64,000 bases of DNA, from positions 1 through 64,000 of IMG/VR virus record IMGVR_UViG_3300028840_002431; one strand, given 5' to 3'. The notes beneath the pieces were generated by a model. That model searched no databases and was not told where the DNA came from. It worked only from the letters and a program-made list of their open reading frames with translations. Positions 41,144 through 55,844 of this stretch are shown piece after piece. Each line of letters starts with the position of its first letter. The stretch's first letter is position 1. Position numbers and translations under genes: made by a program.

Positions 41144-41413
41144 TCATTTCTGTTGGAATTGCGCGAGAGCCTCTTCGACCTCGGTCAAAGACTCATCCAG
41201 TCTCGTGATCATATCCTCCAACTCCTTCTTCGCCTGATCACGTTCCTGGGCAATTTTCTTAGGGTCATACCCGGCGTCTTTTATCTCCTGGACAATGGCA
41301 GCCAACTCTTGTTTCTTGGCTTCCAGTTGGCCAGACAGACTCGCCTTTTTCTGGACAACGTCGTTGTATCTTCGTTGTAAGTCCTCGATTCTCTTTTTAA
41401 CAGTATCGGCCAT
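41144..41413 (-). CDS. Small coiled-coil protein
   Basis: 89 aa with continuous heptads broken once by GYDP; GAGGTG SD. Confidence 0.75.
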   Translation of the reverse strand: MADTVKKRIEDLQRRYNDVVQKKASLSGQLEAKKQELAAIVQEIKDAGYDPKKIAQERDQAKKELEDMITRLDESLTEVEEALAQFQQK

Positions 41414-41446: not shown

Positions 41447-42346
41447 TCAGAAACTGACCTCCCCCTCCTCTACACCACGATTCCGGTCTTCCAGAATCTG
41501 GGTTTTAGTATTATCGGACAACACTCTTGTGCCCTCCGGACAGACGGCCTGGAAATCACAAAGACGGCAATTGGAACCCGGCGAAGCCAGAAAACACACG
41601 CCCGGCTCACTTCCCCGGAGCTTCCGTTTCGCCCCCTCAATCTTGCCGATGGCTTCCAGCGCCGCGTTTTTAAGGTCGTCCAATTGCTTCTGGGTCGCGT
41701 CAACCCAATCCAGGCACTCCTTTGGCTCGAAACGCCAGTAAAGGAACGCCAGCCGGTCGGGGACCACACCCTTCTTCATCTGGTACAACATGGCGTACCA
41801 CCGCAATTGGCGCTCGTCTGTGTACCTATCCCGCCAGCGGGACCCCTTCCCATCCAGGAGGACCAAATCGTTATGAGGTTTGATGCGACGAATTATGAAG
41901 TCAGCCCGACCAGCAAGGGTGTGCCCTCGGACAGAAGTATTTAGAACAACCTCGGCGTGTGCCTCTACCCCCATGAGCCGGTGTGCTTTGATGCCCCGAA
42001 TCCCTCTAGGAATGGTCTCTCTGACCTCTTGTTCTACCTCCTCTATCGACCTCGAACCCGGTTTCAGACCCGGTTCGTTCCAATCGAAGACACCGCCCCT
42101 CCGAATCTCCTGGACGACAACCTTGTTCAACACAGGCCGCACAAGATCCAACATATGGAGTGCGGCGTTGCGCTTAGTCCAGATCCTATCCTCGTAATAC
42201 TTTTCGAAGAGCTTTCCGACCACGTCCCCATAGAGCATGTGTACACGATTACCCGGCTCCGGGAGTTTCGGTTTACCGATATACCGGTAGTAGTAGGCTC
42301 TTGCGCACTGTCTAAAGACAGAGAAACCGGAGTAAGATAAATACAC
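41447..42346 (-). CDS. PD-(D/E)XK nuclease (RecB-like)
   Basis: YLSYSGFSVFRQC, LAGRADFI, LLDGKGS, QLRWYA, C-terminal CRLCDFQAVC. Confidence 0.85.
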   Translation of the reverse strand: MYLSYSGFSVFRQCARAYYYRYIGKPKLPEPGNRVHMLYGDVVGKLFEKYYEDRIWTKRNAALHMLDLVRPVLNKVVVQEIRRGGVFDWNEPGLKPGSRSIEEVEQEVRETIPRGIRGIKAHRLMGVEAHAEVVLNTSVRGHTLAGRADFIIRRIKPHNDLVLLDGKGSRWRDRYTDERQLRWYAMLYQMKKGVVPDRLAFLYWRFEPKECLDWVDATQKQLDDLKNAALEAIGKIEGAKRKLRGSEPGVCFLASPGSNCRLCDFQAVCPEGTRVLSDNTKTQILEDRNRGVEEGEVSF

Positions 42347-46492: not shown

Positions 46493-47383
46493 TCACACTT
46501 GGTCGAGCATGTCCTGGAAGCTATCCGACGAAATGTCTTCGGTAGCGGAGCCGCCAAGCCCCAGCTTGGTCCGAAGCTGATCCGTGGTCATCTCACGGAA
46601 CGGGATCAACTTCTCGTACATGGGAAGCGCCTGGGCCAACACGGCGTTCTTGAACGTATCGTTCTTCTGCCAAATGGCCGGTCCGGCAGCGGACGGCGAG
46701 ATGTTCTGGAACTCCACAACCTTACACTCCAGCCTGATGTCCTGGGAAGCCAGGGAAAGGTTGTTCTCCCGGAGACCGTCGTTGAGCTTCCAGATATCGT
46801 CATAGACGCGAGTGCTGAAACGCCACGGGATGAGCTTCAGCTTCCCGTCCTTGATCTGCTTTCCAAGAGCCTCCTTGTTGAGTTGGCCCTCGTCCGTCGT
46901 CGGGTAGATCAACAGAAGGGTGGTGAAATACGTCTTGGGTTCCGGCAGCCGCTTCCAGATGGCGTCGTCTTCCGGGCCATCCTTACCCAGACGAGAAAGT
47001 ACGTACCCAAGACCCTCTTGGTAGTGGGCCTTCATGACCTTGAAGTGCGAGACGGAGACATCCAACAACTCAGTCGGAGATAGCTCGTCCACACTCTTGC
47101 TCAGTTCCTTGGCGCGGGCTTCTACCGCCTTCTTACCCACAGCCACTATCTCTTCACGAGTCGGCTTCTTGTCGCCCTCCTCCTTACGAGCCGCCTTGAT
47201 GGCAGCGCGAATGGCGTTCGACTCGTAAGTGTAGAAGTAGACAAAAGCACATCGAATGGTCTGACCCTTGGAGGTCATTTTCAACCACTCTTGTTTGGTC
47301 CCCGCAACGTCTCTCTCGTCAGCGTCGAGAGCAACATCGTCCTCGTACGAATACCCATCAATATCAAATATATCGTCTGACAT
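46493..47383 (-). CDS. Single-stranded DNA-binding protein (gp32-like), putative
   Basis: Start reassigned to ATG 47383 (GAGGA SD); aromatic-rich core, QDIRLEC...FQN, acidic/hydrophobic C-tail DSFQDMLDQV; next to ruvC/recA. Confidence 0.6.
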   Translation of the reverse strand: MSDDIFDIDGYSYEDDVALDADERDVAGTKQEWLKMTSKGQTIRCAFVYFYTYESNAIRAAIKAARKEEGDKKPTREEIVAVGKKAVEARAKELSKSVDELSPTELLDVSVSHFKVMKAHYQEGLGYVLSRLGKDGPEDDAIWKRLPEPKTYFTTLLLIYPTTDEGQLNKEALGKQIKDGKLKLIPWRFSTRVYDDIWKLNDGLRENNLSLASQDIRLECKVVEFQNISPSAAGPAIWQKNDTFKNAVLAQALPMYEKLIPFREMTTDQLRTKLGLGGSATEDISSDSFQDMLDQV

Positions 47384-47541
47384 GGCTTTCCTCTTTTTTA
47401 GGGTCGCTCCAACCACAAATTATCAAGTAGGAGGTTAGAAACGACAGTTTCGTTAGCTGACAGACTTGAGGACCATCTCCAGAGGTATCTATATGAGCCT
47501 AATGGTATAGGGTTTCCAAGCCTGTCAGGAGCCTCTACACC
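47384..47541 (-). promoter_or_regulatory. GGTGTAG promoter motif plus structured leader of the SSB gene
   Basis: Motif at 47535-47541; 12-bp stem 47517-47528 / 47457-47468; small hairpin AACGA-AACTG-TCGTT. Confidence 0.55.
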
Positions 47542-47557
47542 AGGGATACAAAACAAT

Positions 47558-48385
47558 TCACAGTTCCTCCAAAAGAGACAAAACGTCTTCCACTTTTTCG
47601 GCATCGCCGTTACCCGTAGTGTCAGACGACTTCTCTTCCACTACGGGTTGTGGTTCCCCTTCTGCGGGGGAGTCGAGAAATTGGGCGACATCTTCTTCTG
47701 TTACCTCCGAAGTCTCCTCGCTCTCGGGTTCTTTTTCTGACTCTTTTACATCCGGCTCTGGCTCGCCCGACTCTTCTTCCCCTTCATCGGCCTCCTCGTC
47801 AGGCTCGTCCAACATGTTCGCCAGTTCCTCTTCGTTCAAATCATCCAGGGCCATCCCGCCAGAAGGCGATCGAATCCCTTTCGCCTTTGTTCGACCCGTC
47901 CGCTCGTCCCCGTAAAAAGACCCGGAATCGATTTCGATCTGGATCAACCGACGCTGGTCCTTGATGGCGGTCATCGTCGCGTGTAACTCTTTGTTGCGGT
48001 AATTCACCACCTTGTAGACCGCGTCCAACTGGTGCATCCGGTCCTTCAGTTTGTTGATTTCTTGTTGTTCCTCACGGAGCATGAAACCGACAGTGGCCTT
48101 ACGGTCTTCCACGCTGGCAAGAAACCGAACGCGCTCGTTATTAGCCAACAGATTGTCGTGCTCTAGAGCGTAGGCTGCTTCTAACTTCCGAAGCTCGCTA
48201 CTGACCTCTAGCTTCTCCCGGTTCAATTCAGAAATTACCAAACCAACCGCGTTCAGGTAATTCCGGCACGTGGCTATGACGTTTTGAAAATACTGGGGAC
48301 CCAGAGATGCCGGGTCGCTTTCCAACTCCAAGATATAGGAATCCATCTCCTTGAAGATGGCGTCTACACGATCCTCGGTGAGCAT
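47558..48385 (-). CDS. Coiled-coil protein with acidic tail (possible recombination mediator)
   Basis: 275 aa, helical N-terminal two thirds, E/D-rich tail. Confidence 0.7.
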   Translation of the reverse strand: MLTEDRVDAIFKEMDSYILELESDPASLGPQYFQNVIATCRNYLNAVGLVISELNREKLEVSSELRKLEAAYALEHDNLLANNERVRFLASVEDRKATVGFMLREEQQEINKLKDRMHQLDAVYKVVNYRNKELHATMTAIKDQRRLIQIEIDSGSFYGDERTGRTKAKGIRSPSGGMALDDLNEEELANMLDEPDEEADEGEEESGEPEPDVKESEKEPESEETSEVTEEDVAQFLDSPAEGEPQPVVEEKSSDTTGNGDAEKVEDVLSLLEEL

Positions 48386-48409: not shown

Positions 48410-49138
48410 TCACACTGGTGCTTTTATGGGCGTTGTTTGCAAACGAAAAAGAAGTTGATCCACGGACATATCGGCGTCGCGCCACTCTTTCACCGCCTGG
48501 ATAAGCTGTAGCCGGGTCGCGGTCTCGACTTGTTTGTCGCGTCTGCTCTTCTCACCCCCCACCGCGATTAGCTCCTTGGCGACGGGGGCACAAACCTCCA
48601 TTATCCGGCAGAATAAGGCTCCTTGTTCGATCGCGTCGTCCACGGCTTTGTGGGTATGTTTTGGTAAACCCTCGAACCACTCTTTCGGCATATTTCTTTT
48701 GCTCGTCTCTCGAAAGGGTTTCCGAAGAACGGCCATGGCCAGGGTCTTGATATCGAGAGCCTGAAAACCAAAAGGGCTTTTCCCCGTAAATTTGATCAGG
48801 TACCAATACACGAAAGTGAAATCGTACCCCGCCGGGTAACAAACACAAACAGGTTTTCCAGGCAAACGATTTAACCACTCGGTAAAACGTAGCATGACCG
48901 ATTGAGGGGCTACTGGGTTGCTTCTACACGCCTTCCAGGCTTCGGGTTGTGTTTCCCACCAAGCCATCGTTTCAGGGTTCCCGGACGCCCCCTCCAAGGT
49001 CTTCAAGTTGGCTGAAAAGGTGTCCACCAGAGTTTCATCCAACTGGTATGCAGCGGCTCCCAAGCTCAACATAGAGTTAGGACCCGGAATAGGCCCATCT
49101 GACTCCACGTCAACGCTTACATAAATTTCCCTAGCCAT
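48410..49138 (-). CDS. DEDDh 3'-5' exonuclease
   Basis: Start reassigned to ATG 49138; [24 protein letters not shown]. Confidence 0.85.
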
Positions 49139-51311
49139 TTTCACTCCCCACCAGATCACGAAAGATGGTGTTGCGTTGAACCACCTTGTCGTTCGCTACA
49201 GCCTTTAACACAGCGTCTGACTGTCCTAACAACCACACCTTATTCCTGGCCCGTGTTATTGCCGTATAGAACAGATTTCTTTGCAACATACGCCCCTGTC
49301 TCCGTACTAGGGGTAAGATTATGGTCTCGAACTCTTCTCCCTGGCAACGGTGTACCGTTACCGCGTACGCCAACTTGAGCATCAATCTAGCTTCGTCCTT
49401 GGGGACTTCAACGTTCGTGTCCGGAGTGTTCCCAACCCCATGGATTCGAAGGGTGAGACTATCCTTTTTGATAGCCACTAACTTGCCAATGTCTCCGTTA
49501 TAGACATTGAGTTCGTAGTTGTTCTTGATAACCATGAGCCGGTCGCCCACCCGTGTTTGAAACTCGGGGAGGCTCCACCGCGCCTGACCTTTGTCCGGGT
49601 TTAACTCGTCTCGCAAAAGATTGTTCAGATTGTTGACCCCGACAACGCCTTCGTACTTAGGAGACAACACCTGAAAATTGGCGTCGCGCCCCTTGAGCTT
49701 GGCGGCCATCTTAACGATAAGCCCCGCAATCTGGCGCTCCTCGGATATCTCCCGGAATTGGAACTCAGTTTGTTCCTTGACCGGAAGGTCTAAAGGCGTC
49801 TTTCCGGCTCTGATCCGGTGGGCAGCCTTTACAATGTCACTCGTCTCAGCTTGTCGGAACACGTGCTCCAACCTGACGTGGGAGACGGCCTCACACAACA
49901 GTAGTTCTCTCAACACATTTCCAGGTCCGACGGACGGAAGCTGTGCGTCGTCTCCGACCAGGACAATCATCGTCTCCGACTCCAAAGCGTCCAGGAGACG
50001 ATAAAACAAACCTTGGTCAACCATCGAGCATTCATCGACGATAATAGCTTGAGTCCGTAACGGTTCGTGCCTGTTGTGCCACCACTGGAAGCCGTCGTAT
50101 TTTAATGCCCGATGGATAGTTGAGGCGCTGTCTTCCGTCACAGCCGCCAGACGCTTTGCGGCGATCCCCGTGGGTGCCATAAGGTTGTAACTTACCCCCA
50201 ACTGTCTGAACAGATGGACAAAGGCACGGATCAACGTCGTCTTCCCCGTCCCCGGTGCCCCTGTCACAACCAACACCCTGTTTGCTATGAGCCTTTCTAT
50301 GGCTTCTCGCTGTCTGTCGGATAACGTTATACTGTTGACGGACTCATAGTTCCGAAGAAAGATTCCGACATCGATAACCAACTCAGACGGGGACAAGAAC
50401 TGTGTGAGTAACGACGCCCCCTCCCGCTCATAAAGATACATATCCGGCAAGTAGACACCCACACCAGGGTCCACCTTTACCTTCTCATCCCTTTCCAGTT
50501 CCTCTATAGCCTTGGTAACTTCGCGGGGGAGATCCGTAGCATCGAATGGCGCTACACCATTAGAGGCGGCTACGACGTTCATGAGTTCCGCGATATCACC
50601 ACGCCTCGCGAATAGGTGTCCCTGGTAAGTCTGTTCTCGAAGAGTCCAAAGAACACCACCCTTGATGCGCCTGGGGTCGCCAAGTTGAAAACCTCTTTTC
50701 ATGGCCAGAGTGTCAACTTGCCGGAAGGGGAAACCCTCGATCTCCATCAAGCGGTACGGATCGTCCCGGATGATATCTATCGAGTCTTCTCCAAACTTCA
50801 TGAATATCTGGGCCACCATCGTTGCCGACAGGCCGTGTTTGCGAAGGAACTCGGCCAGCGTGGCTTCACCGCGAATCCGCCGCCAACGGGTACACGCCAG
50901 TCTCAACACCTCCTCTTCTTCTTCGTCCGCGCTCAAATCATGCCCGTTCAACAGGGCATCATAGGTTTCGGTTCCAAACACCTGGACTGTTTTGCTCAGA
51001 ACCTTCCAGTTATCGAACACCTTGACACAATTACCCAAGAAGAAGCGGACCTCGTTTTCGTCTCTGGCCCAAGGTTGCCAACCCGACGCCTTGTATTGCA
51101 AGCCATACTTCTGGTGGATTTCCCATTCCCCTGAAATTTCCAGAACCGCTCCTTCGATCAACTTCTCGATACCGAAGAAGTACCCCGACACTTTGACATT
51201 ACGGGGACGACGCTCCTCGCCCTTGGCCTCCAAGACCTTAAAGGAGAAGGCGTGGTAGGGAGAGTCCCCGCCGAAGAACACCTTTTTGATACAGCCACGG
51301 TAGTATCCCAC
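49131..51311 (-). CDS. recD2: RecD2-like SF1B helicase
   Basis: DPYRL, HhH region, [49 protein letters not shown]. Confidence 0.93.
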
Positions 51312-51330: not shown

Positions 51331-53247
51331 CTACCCTTCGAGGATAGCCAAAAACTCGGCCTCCGAGATGCATTTGGTGTTATTTTTACGCGCCGCCTGA
51401 GCTTTTGAGGTATTGGAGTTAGGATCGGCCATAACCAGATAGCTCAGTCTCTTGCCAACCGACTTCTTCACCTCTCCGCCAGCGTCCTTGACCATCTTCT
51501 CGAACGTGGGACGAGGCTTGCTCAACGCGCCAGTGAAACAGAAACTCTTACCGGTAAGGGTGCCCTGGATCTTCGCCTCGATCTCGACGCCAAGTGAAAG
51601 GAGTCTGTCAACGACCTCACTCTCCTCTTGGAGCCACGTGTGAAGAGCCTGAGCCTTCACCGGCCCCAACCCTTCGACACCCGACAACTGGCTCATGCTG
51701 GCCGCCTTGAGCTTGTCGAAGGTGTCGTACCCGGCGTCCATAGCCATCTTGATAGTGCTCGAAGCACACAGGGGGATAGACAGAGAGCCAAGAAGCGTCT
51801 CCAGCGGAACCTTCTTCTTGACCCAGAGGGTCTTGATGACCTTGGCAGCCGATTTCTTACCCATCCGCTCGACATTGGTTAACTGCATATCCGTCAGCCG
51901 GTAGAGATCGGACACGTCCTTGACCAGACCCGAAGAGACCAGTTTCTCGATAAGAGTCTCGCCCCACTCCTTGATGTCCATAGCCGCCACGTAACGTTTG
52001 ATCCGGCCGACCGACTGAGCGGGGCACCCGTCCGCGTTGGGGCAGATCAAATACTCCCCGGCCGCTTCCGTTAACGTACCACAAGCGGGACACTCGGAGG
52101 GTGGGTTGGCGATCGTACCCACTCCTTTCACCACCTCAGTAACACGTGGAATCACATCCTGAGCACGAGACACGATAATGGTTGCGCCCACGTCCAGGCC
52201 CAGCGACCGGATGTAGGCCACATTGTAAAGACTGGCGTTCGTGATCTCGGCCCCCAGAATGTTGACCGGCCGGAAGATGGCAACGGGCGTAATACGGCCG
52301 GTTCCCCCGACCTGCCACTCGATACGCTGAAGGACCGACTCCCTGGTCGTCGCCGCGAACTTGAAAGCGACCGCGCCTCTCGGACAGTTGTCTTTCTCTC
52401 CAAGAGCCAGTTGCGCGGCCATGTTATTGATGCGGACCACGAGACCGTCGATGTCGTAATCGAGTTCGTCTCGCTTGAACTGTTGATACTCCAACCACAG
52501 ATCCTGAGGCGTCCTTACGCCCGGCACCATGGCGGTCACGTACCAGTTGGGGGTATCGAAACCGTGGTCTTCGAGCCACTTGAACTGGTCGGCCTCAGTC
52601 TCGAAGTCCTGTCCGTCGGCCACCTGATAAAACTTGACGCTCAAGTGTTCGCAACCCTGGCCGTCGTAGCGTCTTGCAATACCGCTGGCGGCGTTTCTGG
52701 GGTTGGCCTTCTCCGGGAAATACTTGGCGTGGTAGCTTCTCTTCAAGATGATCTCACCACGCAACGTCCCCGTGAAGCTTCTGGGTAGTTTCCCCCTGAC
52801 ACCCTCCATCTTGGAGACGTTGACCGTGATATCCTCTCCGATGTTACCATCGCCACGAGTCGCCGCCTTGTCCAACTCGCCTTTGACGTAGTCCACGGCG
52901 ATCGAGATGCCGTCGAGCTTCTCCGAAGTCATCAACGGAGCGGTCTGGGACTCGCCAGTGCCCGAAAGCCAGGAGGTCAGTTCGTCGATGGTCTTGACGT
53001 TGTCCAGGGACCCCATGGGGATCGAGTGCTCGACCTTCTCCCATTCAGAGACCGGGGTAGCTCCAACGGCGGTTACGGCGTCGCTGTCGGGTTTGACTTC
53101 GGCTAACTCGGCTACCCAGGCGTCGTAAACATCGTCCGAGACTGTCGGAGTTCCATTGTAATAATCGTGCCGCGCCTTCTTGATCTTGGCCTCTAACTCG
53201 GAGGCACGTTCGGCGGACGGTTGAGAAATTAGATCAAAAAAGTCCAT
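51331..53247 (-). CDS. ligA: NAD-dependent DNA ligase
   Basis: Start reassigned to ATG 53247 (the 102-aa extension overlaps another gene); SEKLDG, IDGLVV, AVAFKF, CPACG...C...C zinc finger, BRCT (FCFTG...VGKRLSYLV). Confidence 0.95.
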   Translation of the reverse strand: MDFFDLISQPSAERASELEAKIKKARHDYYNGTPTVSDDVYDAWVAELAEVKPDSDAVTAVGATPVSEWEKVEHSIPMGSLDNVKTIDELTSWLSGTGESQTAPLMTSEKLDGISIAVDYVKGELDKAATRGDGNIGEDITVNVSKMEGVRGKLPRSFTGTLRGEIILKRSYHAKYFPEKANPRNAASGIARRYDGQGCEHLSVKFYQVADGQDFETEADQFKWLEDHGFDTPNWYVTAMVPGVRTPQDLWLEYQQFKRDELDYDIDGLVVRINNMAAQLALGEKDNCPRGAVAFKFAATTRESVLQRIEWQVGGTGRITPVAIFRPVNILGAEITNASLYNVAYIRSLGLDVGATIIVSRAQDVIPRVTEVVKGVGTIANPPSECPACGTLTEAAGEYLICPNADGCPAQSVGRIKRYVAAMDIKEWGETLIEKLVSSGLVKDVSDLYRLTDMQLTNVERMGKKSAAKVIKTLWVKKKVPLETLLGSLSIPLCASSTIKMAMDAGYDTFDKLKAASMSQLSGVEGLGPVKAQALHTWLQEESEVVDRLLSLGVEIEAKIQGTLTGKSFCFTGALSKPRPTFEKMVKDAGGEVKKSVGKRLSYLVMADPNSNTSKAQAARKNNTKCISEAEFLAILEG

Positions 53248-53525: not shown

Positions 53526-55844
53526 CTATATGGAACAGGTACCGCCCGCACAAGCCGGTTCCATCTTCACATCAGTGGTGTCGTCGATCTCTATCAAAGA
53601 CTTGTAATCGACTGGCTCGTACTTCCGCAGAATGTTGTTCCACCTTCTCTCGTTTGCCGGTGTGGTGATGGCCTCGTTGGGGCTGAATGCGTAGTCCTTG
53701 TCCCCGCTGACCGGGAGTAAGGAAACGCCCGTGAAGAAGTTACGGTGCGTCCATAGGTAATCAGCGATACCGTCCCATTCCTCTGGGCAGACTGTGACCG
53801 TGTTAGAAACGTTGTGATTCAAGCCTGGGGAGACGGCCTCCTCTGCCGTGCCAGGGATGACCCAGTTCTGTTGAGTGGACTTCACCATGTCGAGGAACTG
53901 AACGGCGGTAAGGTCCTCTTTGATAATAGCCTGAGGAGGAGCTTCAACCGGGAACTCCACAACCCACTTGCCGTCCGGCTTGCGGACACACATATGAGGA
54001 TTGACGGCCTTGAAGGCTTGGAAGACTGGCTCCAACTCGTCAGCCACCACACGGCGGAAATACCTACGCGCATGGTGAGCATGGTGCCCGGAGCCGACGC
54101 ACCCCAACTCAAGAGAAGTTGTACCGGAGGGTTTCACACAAGTCGTCCTGGCAGCGGAATTGATTCCAAGACGTTTGGCGTACTCAGCGTTCCACTTCTT
54201 GATCTTGAGCGCCACCTTCTTCTGGTACTCCGGGTTACAGGCGACATCCGGAGCGTCCAGCATACCGGTCATACCAATTCCCAGAAGAGCTTCGCGTTTC
54301 GAGAGTTGTTCCGAGACCCAGCCCAAATAAGGCATCTCCGTGTAAGTAGCCTGTAAGGTTCCAATGAGTGTGGCTGCTTTCGCTGCCGTCTCGAAGTCCT
54401 CGTAACACGTGAACTCGGCAGCGTTGATTTCACAAAGGTTGCAAAAAGCCCAGCCGGTGTAAACGTCGCCTACCTTGACGAAGACACCTTGCTTCTTGAG
54501 TCGCGCCCTCAACTTAGAATCGACTTCGAGCTTCGGGTTCATCCCTATCTCGCCACACGGATTCGTACCGTAGTCGTAATCGTTCGTGAAATAGAACCCA
54601 GGCTCACCCCACTGTTTGGTCATCTGGAAGATTCGCTTGAACTGCTTTTTACGAACCTCGTCACGCTTCAAGGCCACGGAGATGTTAACGTTAGCAAACC
54701 AAGGGTCTTTCTCGTACCAGTTTCCGGTCTTGGAGTACATCATTTCACTGTCGTCCAAAGAGAACAGACAGATCATGGCCGACCGACGGATACCACCCGA
54801 CAACACAGCGTCGGCGGAGTGACATAAAATCCTATGACATTCGATGGGCCGAAGCTTACGACCTTGGGCGGCCGATAGCACAGAGCGGACACATTCCAAG
54901 GACTCTTTGAGCTTCAAGTGCCCTGGAGCACGACCCCCGGAAGTTGCGAGCGGCGAACCAGCCGGACGGATCAGGTGATAACTAAACTCGATGTTCACAC
55001 CATCCTGGTAACTTTGTAATAGAGCCTTCAGAGCGTTGGCCCACCCCTCGATGCTGTCTCCTATCACATGATGGACCACCTTCTTCGCGTCTATATACTT
55101 GACGGACGGCAACCTCTCGATGTGATCAAACTGGACGGAGTAGCCCACACCACACCCAGACAGGAGTAGGAACAGGGCCTCCGAGAAAGCGTCGAAACGG
55201 TCGATCAACGTGAAACTACAGTTGTAGATACGGTTGTTGTTAGCTAACACCGCCTTGCCGCCGAACTGCATCGACCTCATCGACGGAAGAACTTTCTTTT
55301 TACGAACAAGGTCGAATGCCTCTTTGATCTCCTCACGCATCTCCGGGAACCGGTCGTGGTGCATCTTCTCGACTCTCGCCACGGTCTCTGAGAACACCTC
55401 ACGCCGTTTCTTGTTAGGCAGGTACCGGGCATACTTGCTGGCATGGATATAATCAGCCAACCCTCGTGGGTCCACCGCCTTGGCTCGTAGCTCTCTAAGC
55501 TCTTGCCTCTGATGGCGATAGAGAATGTACGCCTTGGCTACGGCGAACTCCTTATGCCTCATAAGAGAGGTCTCAACAGCGTCCTGGACGATTTCAACGT
55601 CCACAACCTCTTCCCCTATGGTGTTTAAAACTGTCTTAACCACCCCCGAAATAGACCTTGTGTCCGAAGAGGGTAGTTCCCCGTTCTCAGGAGTTTTGAC
55701 ACTCACCCAGGCTGAATGAATGGCGCTACGTAGTTTACCCTCGTCAAAAGACTGGAGTGTTACGCCGTCCCTCTTTCTAATGTATTTGATATCAACTGGC
55801 ATATACAAAACTCGGGGCTGAGCTTCCTGAGTTTGGGCTTGCAT
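53526..55844 (-). CDS. nrdJ: Class II (B12-dependent, monomeric-type) ribonucleotide reductase with N-terminal ATP cone
   Basis: IRKRDG ATP cone; YNCSF, GCGVGYS, DSIEGW, GGIRRSA, TNPCGEI, VKPSGT, C-terminal CAGGTC; no C-terminal YY pair and no nrdB nearby. Confidence 0.85.
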   Translation of the reverse strand: MQAQTQEAQPRVLYMPVDIKYIRKRDGVTLQSFDEGKLRSAIHSAWVSVKTPENGELPSSDTRSISGVVKTVLNTIGEEVVDVEIVQDAVETSLMRHKEFAVAKAYILYRHQRQELRELRAKAVDPRGLADYIHASKYARYLPNKKRREVFSETVARVEKMHHDRFPEMREEIKEAFDLVRKKKVLPSMRSMQFGGKAVLANNNRIYNCSFTLIDRFDAFSEALFLLLSGCGVGYSVQFDHIERLPSVKYIDAKKVVHHVIGDSIEGWANALKALLQSYQDGVNIEFSYHLIRPAGSPLATSGGRAPGHLKLKESLECVRSVLSAAQGRKLRPIECHRILCHSADAVLSGGIRRSAMICLFSLDDSEMMYSKTGNWYEKDPWFANVNISVALKRDEVRKKQFKRIFQMTKQWGEPGFYFTNDYDYGTNPCGEIGMNPKLEVDSKLRARLKKQGVFVKVGDVYTGWAFCNLCEINAAEFTCYEDFETAAKAATLIGTLQATYTEMPYLGWVSEQLSKREALLGIGMTGMLDAPDVACNPEYQKKVALKIKKWNAEYAKRLGINSAARTTCVKPSGTTSLELGCVGSGHHAHHARRYFRRVVADELEPVFQAFKAVNPHMCVRKPDGKWVVEFPVEAPPQAIIKEDLTAVQFLDMVKSTQQNWVIPGTAEEAVSPGLNHNVSNTVTVCPEEWDGIADYLWTHRNFFTGVSLLPVSGDKDYAFSPNEAITTPANERRWNNILRKYEPVDYKSLIEIDDTTDVKMEPACAGGTCSI

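What the first reader, a model, noticed from the sequence alone, without database searches (positions are those of the whole stretch)
47384..47541. Structured ~145-nt leader on the SSB gene, starting where the GGTGTAG promoter predicts
Seen: the largest spacer in the replication module. GGTGTAG (47535-47541) is followed ~10 nt later by a 12-bp stem CTGACAGGCTTG/CAAGTCTGTCAG enclosing an inner ACCAT/ATGGT stem, then a small hairpin, then an A/U-rich stretch to the SD. Known: T4 gp32 represses its own translation through a structured nucleation site plus an unstructured operator. Inference: an analogous autoregulatory leader, or a separate small RNA.
Basis: partly seen in the sequence, partly recalled or inferred. 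Interest (0 to 1): 0.6.

Follow-up and report, generated by a model that had tools for sequence, protein, structure and literature searches.

The report
Conserved structured leader on phage SSB gene
The 174-base gap before a T4-gp32-like single-strand-DNA-binding protein gene of an uncultivated 416-kb phage encodes a two-hairpin RNA leader kept by compensatory mutations in dozens of related huge phages and absent from Rfam; it most likely controls how much of the protein is made.

Summary
The spacer 47557-47384 is non-coding. GGTGTAG (47541-47535) is followed by a long irregular hairpin P1 (47528-47457).

The "small hairpin" and "A/U-rich stretch" belong to a conserved 12-bp hairpin P2 (47445-47403). 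P2 ends a median 19 nt before the AUG.

Both helices are kept across relatives by compensatory changes. About 88-94% of cells pair, against 69-80% in shuffles and 30-52% in slid controls. G.U outnumbers A.C 85 to 14, so the structure is sense-strand RNA.

A P2 covariance model hits only the place just upstream of this gene: 36 relatives, once in the 416-kb genome, and nothing elsewhere in 257 kb of relatives' flanks. Rfam has no match.

The downstream protein has no Pfam or PHROG hit but folds like the T4/RB69 gp32 core (Z 8.9).

GGTGTA(A/G) behaves as a -10-only promoter. 52 genes start exactly 8-9 nt after it without a Shine-Dalgarno. The same spacing puts the leader's 5' end at the base of P1.

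SSB autoregulation is plausible but untested. The T4 operator's pseudoknot and UUAAA repeats are absent. I rate it a new variant of a known kind.

The parts
47558..48385 (-). Upstream gene (275 aa): helical N-terminal domain and a long acidic tail. There is a weak lead to UvsY. Its stop codon is TGA 47560-47558.
   Evidence: ORF list and translation. No Pfam or PHROG hit. ESM Atlas lead to a UvsY cluster at 0.90, a lead only.
47535..47541 (-). GGTGTAG, a -10-only promoter-like element.
   Evidence: Of 265 GGTGTAN sites in the genome, 52 are followed at exactly 8 or 9 nt by an ORF-opening ATG/GTG. Only 4 of those 52 spacers hold an SD. GGTGTA is kept just after the upstream stop in most relatives.
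47525..47526 (-). Predicted transcription start: the 9th or 10th nt after the motif, inside the first pairs of P1.
   Evidence: Inferred from the 8-9 nt rule of the leaderless genes. In relatives the long P1 helix begins at nt +7 to +12 after the motif, most often +9. It has not been mapped; no RNA run was listed.
47457..47528 (-). P1: a long irregular hairpin with a 13-bp basal helix (47528-47516 with 47469-47457), then short helices separated by small internal loops.
   Evidence: Folds. z is -3.3 here and the median over 26 relatives is -4.1. 7 of 12 basal pairs show compensatory changes and 93.5% of cells pair.
47446..47456 (-). A-rich linker between P1 and P2.
   Evidence: Alignments A2 and A3.
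47403..47445 (-). P2: a conserved 12-bp hairpin with one bulged U. 5' strand 47445-47433, 18-nt apical loop 47432-47415, 3' strand 47414-47403. The loop starts with the conserved UCC and ends with UUUGU.
   Evidence: RNAalifold. Covariance models R1 and R2. 11 of 12 pairs are compensatory and 88% of cells pair, against 69-72% in shuffles. G.U 85 against A.C 14.
47386..47402 (-). Conserved CC directly after P2, an A-run, and the Shine-Dalgarno AGAGGAAAG (47394-47386). This is the putative operator/RBS tract.
   Evidence: Alignments A5 and A7. The distance from P2 to the AUG is 16-26 nt (median 19), with A 45% and U 9%.
46493..47383 (-). Gene for a 296-aa gp32-fold SSB candidate, starting at ATG 47383.
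   Evidence: AF2 model with pLDDT 76. Foldseek's top 6 hits are all gp32. VIA gives 1gpc Z 8.9 over 169 residues, with the next unrelated fold at 5.3. The family has at least 288 members on huge-phage contigs. No PF08804 or PF00436 match anywhere in the genome.

Best explanation
The spacer is the 5' untranslated leader of the mRNA for a gp32-fold single-strand-DNA-binding protein.

Transcription is predicted to start 9-10 nt after a phage-specific -10-only promoter element, GGTGTA(A/G). The first transcribed bases would then already be paired in P1. P1 would act as a 5'-terminal protective hairpin, giving a long-lived message for a protein needed in bulk.

P2 has a conserved UCC...UUUGU loop and a conserved CC flank, and it ends about 19 nt before the AUG. 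Together with the short A-rich tract that carries the Shine-Dalgarno, it is a translational operator. Most likely free SSB binds there once ssDNA is saturated and blocks the 30S subunit, so the protein limits its own synthesis.

Shown here: the RNA structure, its conservation, its exclusive link to this gene, the fold of the protein, and the fixed promoter-to-start spacing.

Inferred: the transcription start, the stabilising role of P1, and the identity of the repressor.

The confidence given (0.45) is for the full statement including SSB autoregulation. That this is a conserved, cis-acting structured RNA leader of the SSB message I hold at about 0.9.
For: - Structure: P1 and P2 are kept by compensatory changes. 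In 14 sequences, 18 of 24 pairs change on both sides, with 93.9% of cells paired against 79.5% in shuffles and 30-47% in slid controls.
- P2 in 36 distinct sequences: 88.1% paired against 68.7% in shuffles, 97 double-change cells, and 0 of 500 shuffles as high on four of the five measures (3 of 500 on the count of pairs with a change on both sides).
- Sense-strand RNA: G.U 85 against A.C 14.
- Non-coding: 27 of 28 long leaders have stops in all three frames.
- Specificity: models R1 and R2 hit only the place ending at the SSB start codon. That covers 36 relatives, one hit in the 64-kb window, one in the 416-kb genome, and none elsewhere in 257 kb of flanks.
- Fixed geometry next to the RBS: 16-26 nt from P2 to the AUG.
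- Protein: gp32 fold within a helicase / exonuclease / RuvC-like / UvsX-like module. No other SSB was detectable.
- Promoter: 52 genes start 8-9 nt after GGTGTAN without an SD. The same arrangement occurs in 37 of 71 related loci. The P1 helix starts at the equivalent position.
- Precedent: T4 and RB69 gp32 repress their own mRNAs through a structured element followed by the RBS (PMC535899).
Against: - There are no expression data; no RNA run was listed, so the transcription start is only predicted.
- The T4 operator's defining parts are absent. There is no supported pseudoknot. The single-stranded tract is about 19 nt, not more than 40. A single UAAA occurs in only 6 of 36 leaders and none has two.
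- The protein's N-terminus is acidic. From my own knowledge, T4 gp32 has a basic N-terminal segment needed for cooperative binding, so T4-style cooperative spreading may not apply.
- The SD tract is only about half unpaired in predicted ensembles.
- One lineage (L045) has the gene with no leader at all.
- Nothing here identifies the trans-acting factor.
Confidence: 0.45

Rival explanations
1. The leader has no feedback role. P1 protects the 5' end, and P2 merely spaces or presents the strong SD as a standby site or enhancer. In a phage whose other messages are mostly leaderless, this makes the SSB message unusually stable and well translated.
For: The predicted start lies at the base of P1. 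A second GGTGTAG at 41476 is also followed by a hairpin near the predicted start and then an SD-led gene. SSB is needed in stoichiometric amounts (general knowledge).
Against: This does not explain the conserved unpaired UCC, UUUGU and CC nucleotides, or the tight 16-26 nt distance between P2 and the AUG. Distant clades keep P2 and drop P1 (by eye), so P2 is the core of the element.
Confidence: 0.25
2. P2 is the operator for some other trans-acting factor: another phage RNA-binding repressor, a host protein, a small RNA or a small molecule.
For: The conserved loop and flank nucleotides imply recognition by something. The identity of the ligand is not constrained by the data.
Against: There is a single copy per genome, always on the SSB gene. 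That pattern is typical of autogenous control rather than a regulon. The conserved core is too small and simple for a typical metabolite riboswitch.
Confidence: 0.15
3. P1 is an RNase III-type processing site, or P1 with P2 is released as an independent small RNA.
For: P1 is a rod of roughly 25 bp with small internal loops. From my own knowledge this resembles the intergenic RNase III sites of T7.
Against: There is no terminator after P1 or P2. P2 always sits at a fixed distance from the SD and AUG. There are no off-gene copies.
Confidence: 0.06
4. It is a DNA-level element: a replication origin, R-loop primer site or recombination hotspot next to the recombination genes.
For: It lies inside the replication/recombination module beside a possible UvsY-like gene. 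From my own knowledge, T4 has an origin at uvsY that uses a promoter transcript.
Against: The strong G.U over A.C asymmetry (85 against 14) means only the sense strand can fold. Double-stranded DNA elements do not show this pattern of compensatory change. There is no AT-rich unwinding tract.
Confidence: 0.03

Closest known systems
Translational operator of T4/RB69 gene 32 (autogenous repression by gp32)
   Same: It is a structured element in the 5' leader of a gp32-fold SSB gene, followed by a purine/A-rich single-stranded tract carrying the RBS. It occurs once per genome and is specific to that gene.
   Different: The T4 operator is a roughly 28-nt H-type pseudoknot plus more than 40 nt of unstructured RNA with UUAAA/UAAA repeats (PMC535899). 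Here there are two hairpins supported by covariation, no supported pseudoknot, only about 19 nt of single strand, and almost no UAAA. There is no detectable sequence relation. The protein lacks a Pfam gp32 match. Against T4 gp32 as I know it, it also has only two cysteines where T4 has a Cys3-His zinc site, and an acidic rather than basic N-terminus.
T4 gene 43 (DNA polymerase) translational operator; my own knowledge
   Same: A hairpin with conserved loop nucleotides lies directly 5' of the SD. A replication protein binds it and thereby occludes its own RBS. Geometrically this is closer to P2 than the gene 32 pseudoknot is.
   Different: The regulator there is the polymerase, and its hairpin is much smaller (5-bp stem). 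No homology was tested or expected.
5'-terminal stabilising stem-loops (for example E. coli ompA, and the T4 gene 32 leader's stabilising effect); my own knowledge
   Same: The hairpin begins at, or within a few nucleotides of, the predicted 5' end.
   Different: The 5' end here is predicted, not mapped. P1 is far longer and more elaborate than a minimal protective hairpin.
Promoters of leaderless mRNAs and -10-only phage promoters (such as the T4 late TATAAATA promoter; my own knowledge)
   Same: A single short conserved element with no -35 box sits at a fixed short distance from the start codon, with no SD. GeneMarkS-2 models such signals (PMC6028130, title and abstract only).
   Different: The motif GGTGTA(A/G) matched no description I could find. 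No sigma-70 region 2 or RNAP beta domain was found in the phage, so the enzyme that reads it is unknown.

Membership tests
T4-type gene 32 translational operator | Located in the 5' leader of the gene for a gp32-type SSB | tested here: met
   The leader ends at ATG 47383 of a protein whose model matches the gp32 core: Foldseek's top 6 hits, and VIA Z 8.9 over 169 residues.
T4-type gene 32 translational operator | 5'-terminal H-type RNA pseudoknot of about 28 nt as the nucleation site (PMC535899) | tested here: not met
   Covariation supports two nested hairpins. Pairing of the P2 loop with the downstream tract was no better for a leader's own tract than for other leaders' tracts: -3.57 against -3.33 kcal/mol for the 5' side of the loop, and -1.79 against -1.85 for the 3' side.
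T4-type gene 32 translational operator | More than 40 nt of unstructured RNA with repeated UUAAA/UAAA, including the RBS | tested here: not met
   The distance from P2 to the AUG is 16-26 nt. Composition is A 45% and U 9%. 6 of 36 leaders have one UAAA and none has two.
T4-type gene 32 translational operator | The SSB binds the operator and represses its own translation | not testable with these tools
   This needs binding and translation assays.
gp32 protein family (Pfam PF08804) | Sequence-level match to the family profile | tested here: not met
   No Pfam or PHROG hit for the protein. No PF08804 match in the genome. A profile of 22 homologues finds no gp32 chain in the PDB sequences. The similarity is at fold level only.
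Known RNA families (Rfam 15) | Covariance-model match at or near the gathering score | tested here: not met
   No hits at gathering score over the whole window. A permissive scan of 47300-47650 gave only three matches (E 0.49-4.9, 11-14 bits), all far below their gathering scores of 50-90 bits.
Intrinsic terminator / independent small RNA | GC-rich hairpin followed by a U-tract at the 3' end | tested here: not met
   No terminator-like site in 47200-47800. P1 and P2 are followed by A-rich sequence.
Promoter for leaderless mRNAs | Conserved motif at a fixed short distance from start codons that lack an SD | tested here: met
   52 of 265 GGTGTAN sites have an ORF-opening start at +8 or +9, against 1-7 at each other offset that has any (within 40 nt). 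Five control motifs (three one-base variants, a two-base variant and the reverse complement) show no such peak. 4 of 52 spacers hold an SD.
5'-terminal protective stem-loop | Helix begins within a few nucleotides of the mapped 5' end | tested here: inconclusive
   The P1 helix begins at nt +7 to +12 after the motif, and the predicted start is +9 or +10. No 5' end has been mapped.

The most novel reading that the evidence does not exclude
This is a previously undescribed, widespread class of cis-regulatory RNA in uncultivated huge phages. A gp32-fold SSB would gauge its own free concentration through a hairpin operator (P2) rather than the T4 pseudoknot, which would be an independent solution to the same control problem. 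The leader is launched from a clade-wide -10-only promoter, GGTGTA(A/G), that otherwise makes leaderless mRNAs.
Probability: 0.4. Interest if true: 0.7.

Novelty: new variant of a known kind. Interest (0 to 1): 0.6.

Why it matters
- SSB autoregulation is a textbook case known essentially from T4-like phages. A structurally unrelated but positionally equivalent leader, conserved across a large uncultivated huge-phage clade, would show that the control logic is general while the RNA solution is not.
- It gives a defined RNA-protein pair that can be tested in vitro without culturing the phage.
- The covariation-supported motif is a ready candidate for a new RNA family.
- The GGTGTA(A/G) promoter and leaderless rule improves gene-start calling in these genomes. 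It also points to an unidentified transcription specificity factor.

Tried and rejected
- Rfam and tRNA scans found nothing.
- The phage GenBank collection has no relative by DNA or by protein.
- The motif-plus-stem pattern scan of IMG/VR found the three known lineages plus two chance hits inside coding sequence, L007 and L008.
- The 68-aa ORF 47398-47604, which spans the spacer, is rejected as coding. Relatives have stops in all frames, and leader lengths are not multiples of three.
- A pseudoknot or three-way junction pairing the P2 loop strands (UCC, UUUG) with the CAAAGGA-like SD tract looked attractive by eye. It got no support from own-versus-cross duplex energies or shuffles.
- A 2-3 bp helix between the CC flank and the GG of the SD is predicted in about half of the leaders. 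It cannot be tested because both sides are invariant.
- RNAalifold on a MAFFT alignment of the short leaders from distant clades returned no pairs. The P2-like hairpin there was seen only by eye.
- No sequencing run of RNA was listed.
- No sigma-70 type promoter was found in the spacer.
- Sigma-70 region 2 and RNAP beta searches of the phage genome were blank.

Full report
**Setting.** The window is the first 64 kb of a single 416,539-bp viral contig, estimated 87% complete. Nearly all genes in the window lie on the minus strand.

Around the finding sits a replication/recombination module:
- ribonucleotide reductase
- NAD ligase
- RecD2-like helicase (49131-51311)
- an exonuclease (48410-49159)
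- a 275-aa acidic protein (47558-48385)
- the spacer
- a 296-aa protein (46493-47383)
- a RuvC-like resolvase
- a UvsX/RecA-like recombinase
- an SbcC-like ATPase

**Observation.** On the minus strand the upstream gene stops at 47560-47558 and GGTGTAG lies at 47541-47535. A 13-bp helix pairs 47528-47516 with 47469-47457 and closes an irregular hairpin, P1. The SD AGAGGAAAG is at 47394-47386 and the ATG at 47383.

The whole spacer folds only marginally better than shuffles (z -1.37). The P1 domain alone is clearly non-random: z is -3.3 here, and the median over 26 distinct relatives is -4.1, with 23 of 26 below -2.

**The downstream gene.** The gene has no Pfam or PHROG match. It belongs to a family of at least 288 unnamed proteins (all 120 listed are 278-323 aa), found on metagenomic contigs of up to 549 kb.

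An AlphaFold model built on 22 homologues (pLDDT 76; disordered residues 1-32 and 278-296) finds T4/RB69 gp32 as Foldseek's six best PDB matches. By VIA-align, the gp32 core 1gpc scores Z 8.9 with 169 aligned residues. The next unrelated fold scores 5.3.

Sequence profiles do not reach gp32, and no classical SSB domain occurs anywhere in the genome. So 'SSB gene' is supported at fold and context level only. The protein has acidic termini at both ends and only two cysteines. From my own knowledge, T4 gp32 differs: it has a basic N-terminal segment and a Cys3-His zinc site.

**Relatives and conservation.** Protein-guided scans returned 58 metagenomic and 23 IMG/VR loci. In most of them the spacer begins with GGTGTA just after the upstream stop codon.

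RNAalifold on 14 full-length leaders predicts two helices, the base of P1 and a second hairpin P2. 18 of the 24 pairs change on both sides. On that alignment 93.9% of cells pair, against 79.5% in column shuffles and 30-47% when partners are slid. 7 of 12 P1 pairs and 11 of 12 P2 pairs are compensatory.

In the window, P2 has these parts:
- 47445-47440 pairs with 47408-47403.
- There is one bulged U.
- 47438-47433 pairs with 47414-47409.
- Together they enclose an 18-nt loop.

**P2 models.** I built two covariance models of P2 plus the tract down to the AUG. Each found 36 matches, and every match ends at the SSB start codon. There was one hit in the window, one in the whole 416-kb genome, and none elsewhere in 257 kb of relatives' flanks.

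On the 36 distinct sequences of the second search, 88.1% of cells pair, against 68.7% in shuffles and 36-52% in slid controls. There are 97 double-change cells. That alignment was fitted to the model, so it leans towards the structure. The independent MAFFT/RNAalifold result agrees.

G.U pairs outnumber A.C mismatches 85 to 14, so only the sense strand can fold. 27 of 28 long leaders carry stops in all three frames. The element is therefore a structured, non-coding sense-strand RNA.

**Conserved unpaired nucleotides.** These are:
- UCC at the 5' side of the P2 loop;
- a small GCC/GGC helix inside the loop in most relatives (GUC/GAC in two of them; absent in the window);
- UUUGU before the 3' strand;
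- CC directly after P2.

P2 ends 16-26 nt (median 19) before the AUG. The tract between them is A-rich (A 45%, U 9%) and carries the SD.

More distant clades have leaders of only 85-100 nt. By eye these consist of the motif plus a P2-like hairpin with the same CC, YUUG and CC landmarks. One lineage, L045, has no leader at all. P2 is therefore the core of the element, and P1 is an addition in the clade that includes this phage.

**The GGTGTAG motif.** Genome-wide, 52 of 265 GGTGTAN sites are followed at exactly 8 or 9 nt by an ATG or GTG that opens an ORF of at least 60 aa. Every other offset scores 1-7. Five control motifs (three one-base variants, a two-base variant and the reverse complement) show no peak. 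Only (C)GGTGTA(A/G) is conserved, with no -35 box, and 4 of the 52 spacers hold an SD. The same arrangement recurs in 37 of 71 related loci.

The simplest reading is a -10-only promoter whose transcripts begin at the start codon, giving leaderless mRNAs. A ribosome-binding role cannot explain the motif's conservation 150 nt upstream of an SD-led gene.

Applying the same spacing to the spacer puts the 5' end at 47526 or 47525. In relatives the long P1 helix begins at nt +7 to +12 after the motif, most often +9. The transcript would therefore start already paired. This start is predicted, not observed; no RNA run was listed. No sigma-70 type promoter or intrinsic terminator lies in 47200-47800. 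No sigma region 2 or RNAP beta domain was found in the phage.

**Mechanism.** What is shown is a gene-specific, single-copy, covariation-supported leader whose conserved hairpin sits at a fixed short distance from the RBS of a gp32-fold SSB gene. This is the usual signature of an autogenous translational operator.

The only well-studied precedent for this protein fold is T4/RB69 gene 32. There a pseudoknot nucleates cooperative gp32 binding over an unstructured UUAAA-rich RBS tract (PMC535899).

I therefore favour SSB binding at P2 and its flank, with occlusion of the RBS, and P1 acting as a 5' protective hairpin. The T4 details do not carry over:
- No pseudoknot is supported.
- The single-stranded tract is short.
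- UAAA repeats are lacking.

A possible 2-3 bp helix between the CC flank and the SD is predicted in about half of the leaders but cannot be tested.

The rivals are a pure stability or expression element, an operator for another factor, an RNase III site or small RNA, and a DNA-level element. They are listed with their evidence in the Rival explanations section. The last is disfavoured by the G.U asymmetry.

**Novelty.** Rfam 15 has no match. The phage GenBank collection holds no relative. Three literature searches found no description of the motif or the promoter.

The kind of element, an autoregulatory leader on a phage SSB gene, is known. This architecture, and its spread through an uncultivated huge-phage clade, appear to be new.

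Noticed in passing
whole genome G000; in the window for example 48400-48394, 51327-51321 and 10742-10736 (minus strand): GGTGTA(A/G) followed at exactly 8-9 nt by a start codon without an SD occurs at 52 genes genome-wide. It looks like a -10-only promoter producing leaderless mRNAs, and it also occurs in 37 of 71 related loci. No sigma-70 region 2 or RNAP beta domain was found in the phage.
   Followed up: yes
window 53277-53245 (minus strand): Two GGTGTAG motifs sit 16 nt apart. An in-frame ATG at 53247 lies 7 nt after the second motif, so the NAD ligase probably starts there (638 aa) rather than at the TTG at 53553. Homology to ligases begins only around residue 114 of the long ORF. An ORF of about 80 aa fills the gap after the RNR gene, and its TAG stop overlaps the first motif.
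   Followed up: partly
window 41476-41411 (minus strand): A second GGTGTAG is followed by a hairpin (GGTCAG-TTT-CTGACC) starting about 11 nt after the motif. An SD (ACGAGGTG) and an ATG at 41413 follow. This is another case of a promoter motif, a 5'-proximal hairpin and an SD-led gene.
   Followed up: partly
window 47558-48385 (minus strand): The upstream 275-aa protein has a helical N-terminal domain with a weak ESM Atlas lead to UvsY (0.90). Its roughly 100-residue acidic tail ends in LSLLEEL. This resembles the conserved acidic, leucine-rich C-terminal tail of the SSB candidate, which may mean a shared partner-binding tail.
   Followed up: partly
window 47398-47604 (minus strand): A 68-aa ORF runs from inside the upstream gene across the whole spacer. 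It is not conserved: relatives have stops in all frames. It should not be annotated as a gene.
   Followed up: yes
genome G000 about 77,000-81,500 (outside the window): Some GGTGTAG occurrences there sit in sequences that look like tRNA 5' and 3' ends (GGTGTAGCTCAATGG..., ...GGTTCGATTCCA), suggesting a tRNA cluster. No tRNA lies in the window itself.
   Followed up: no
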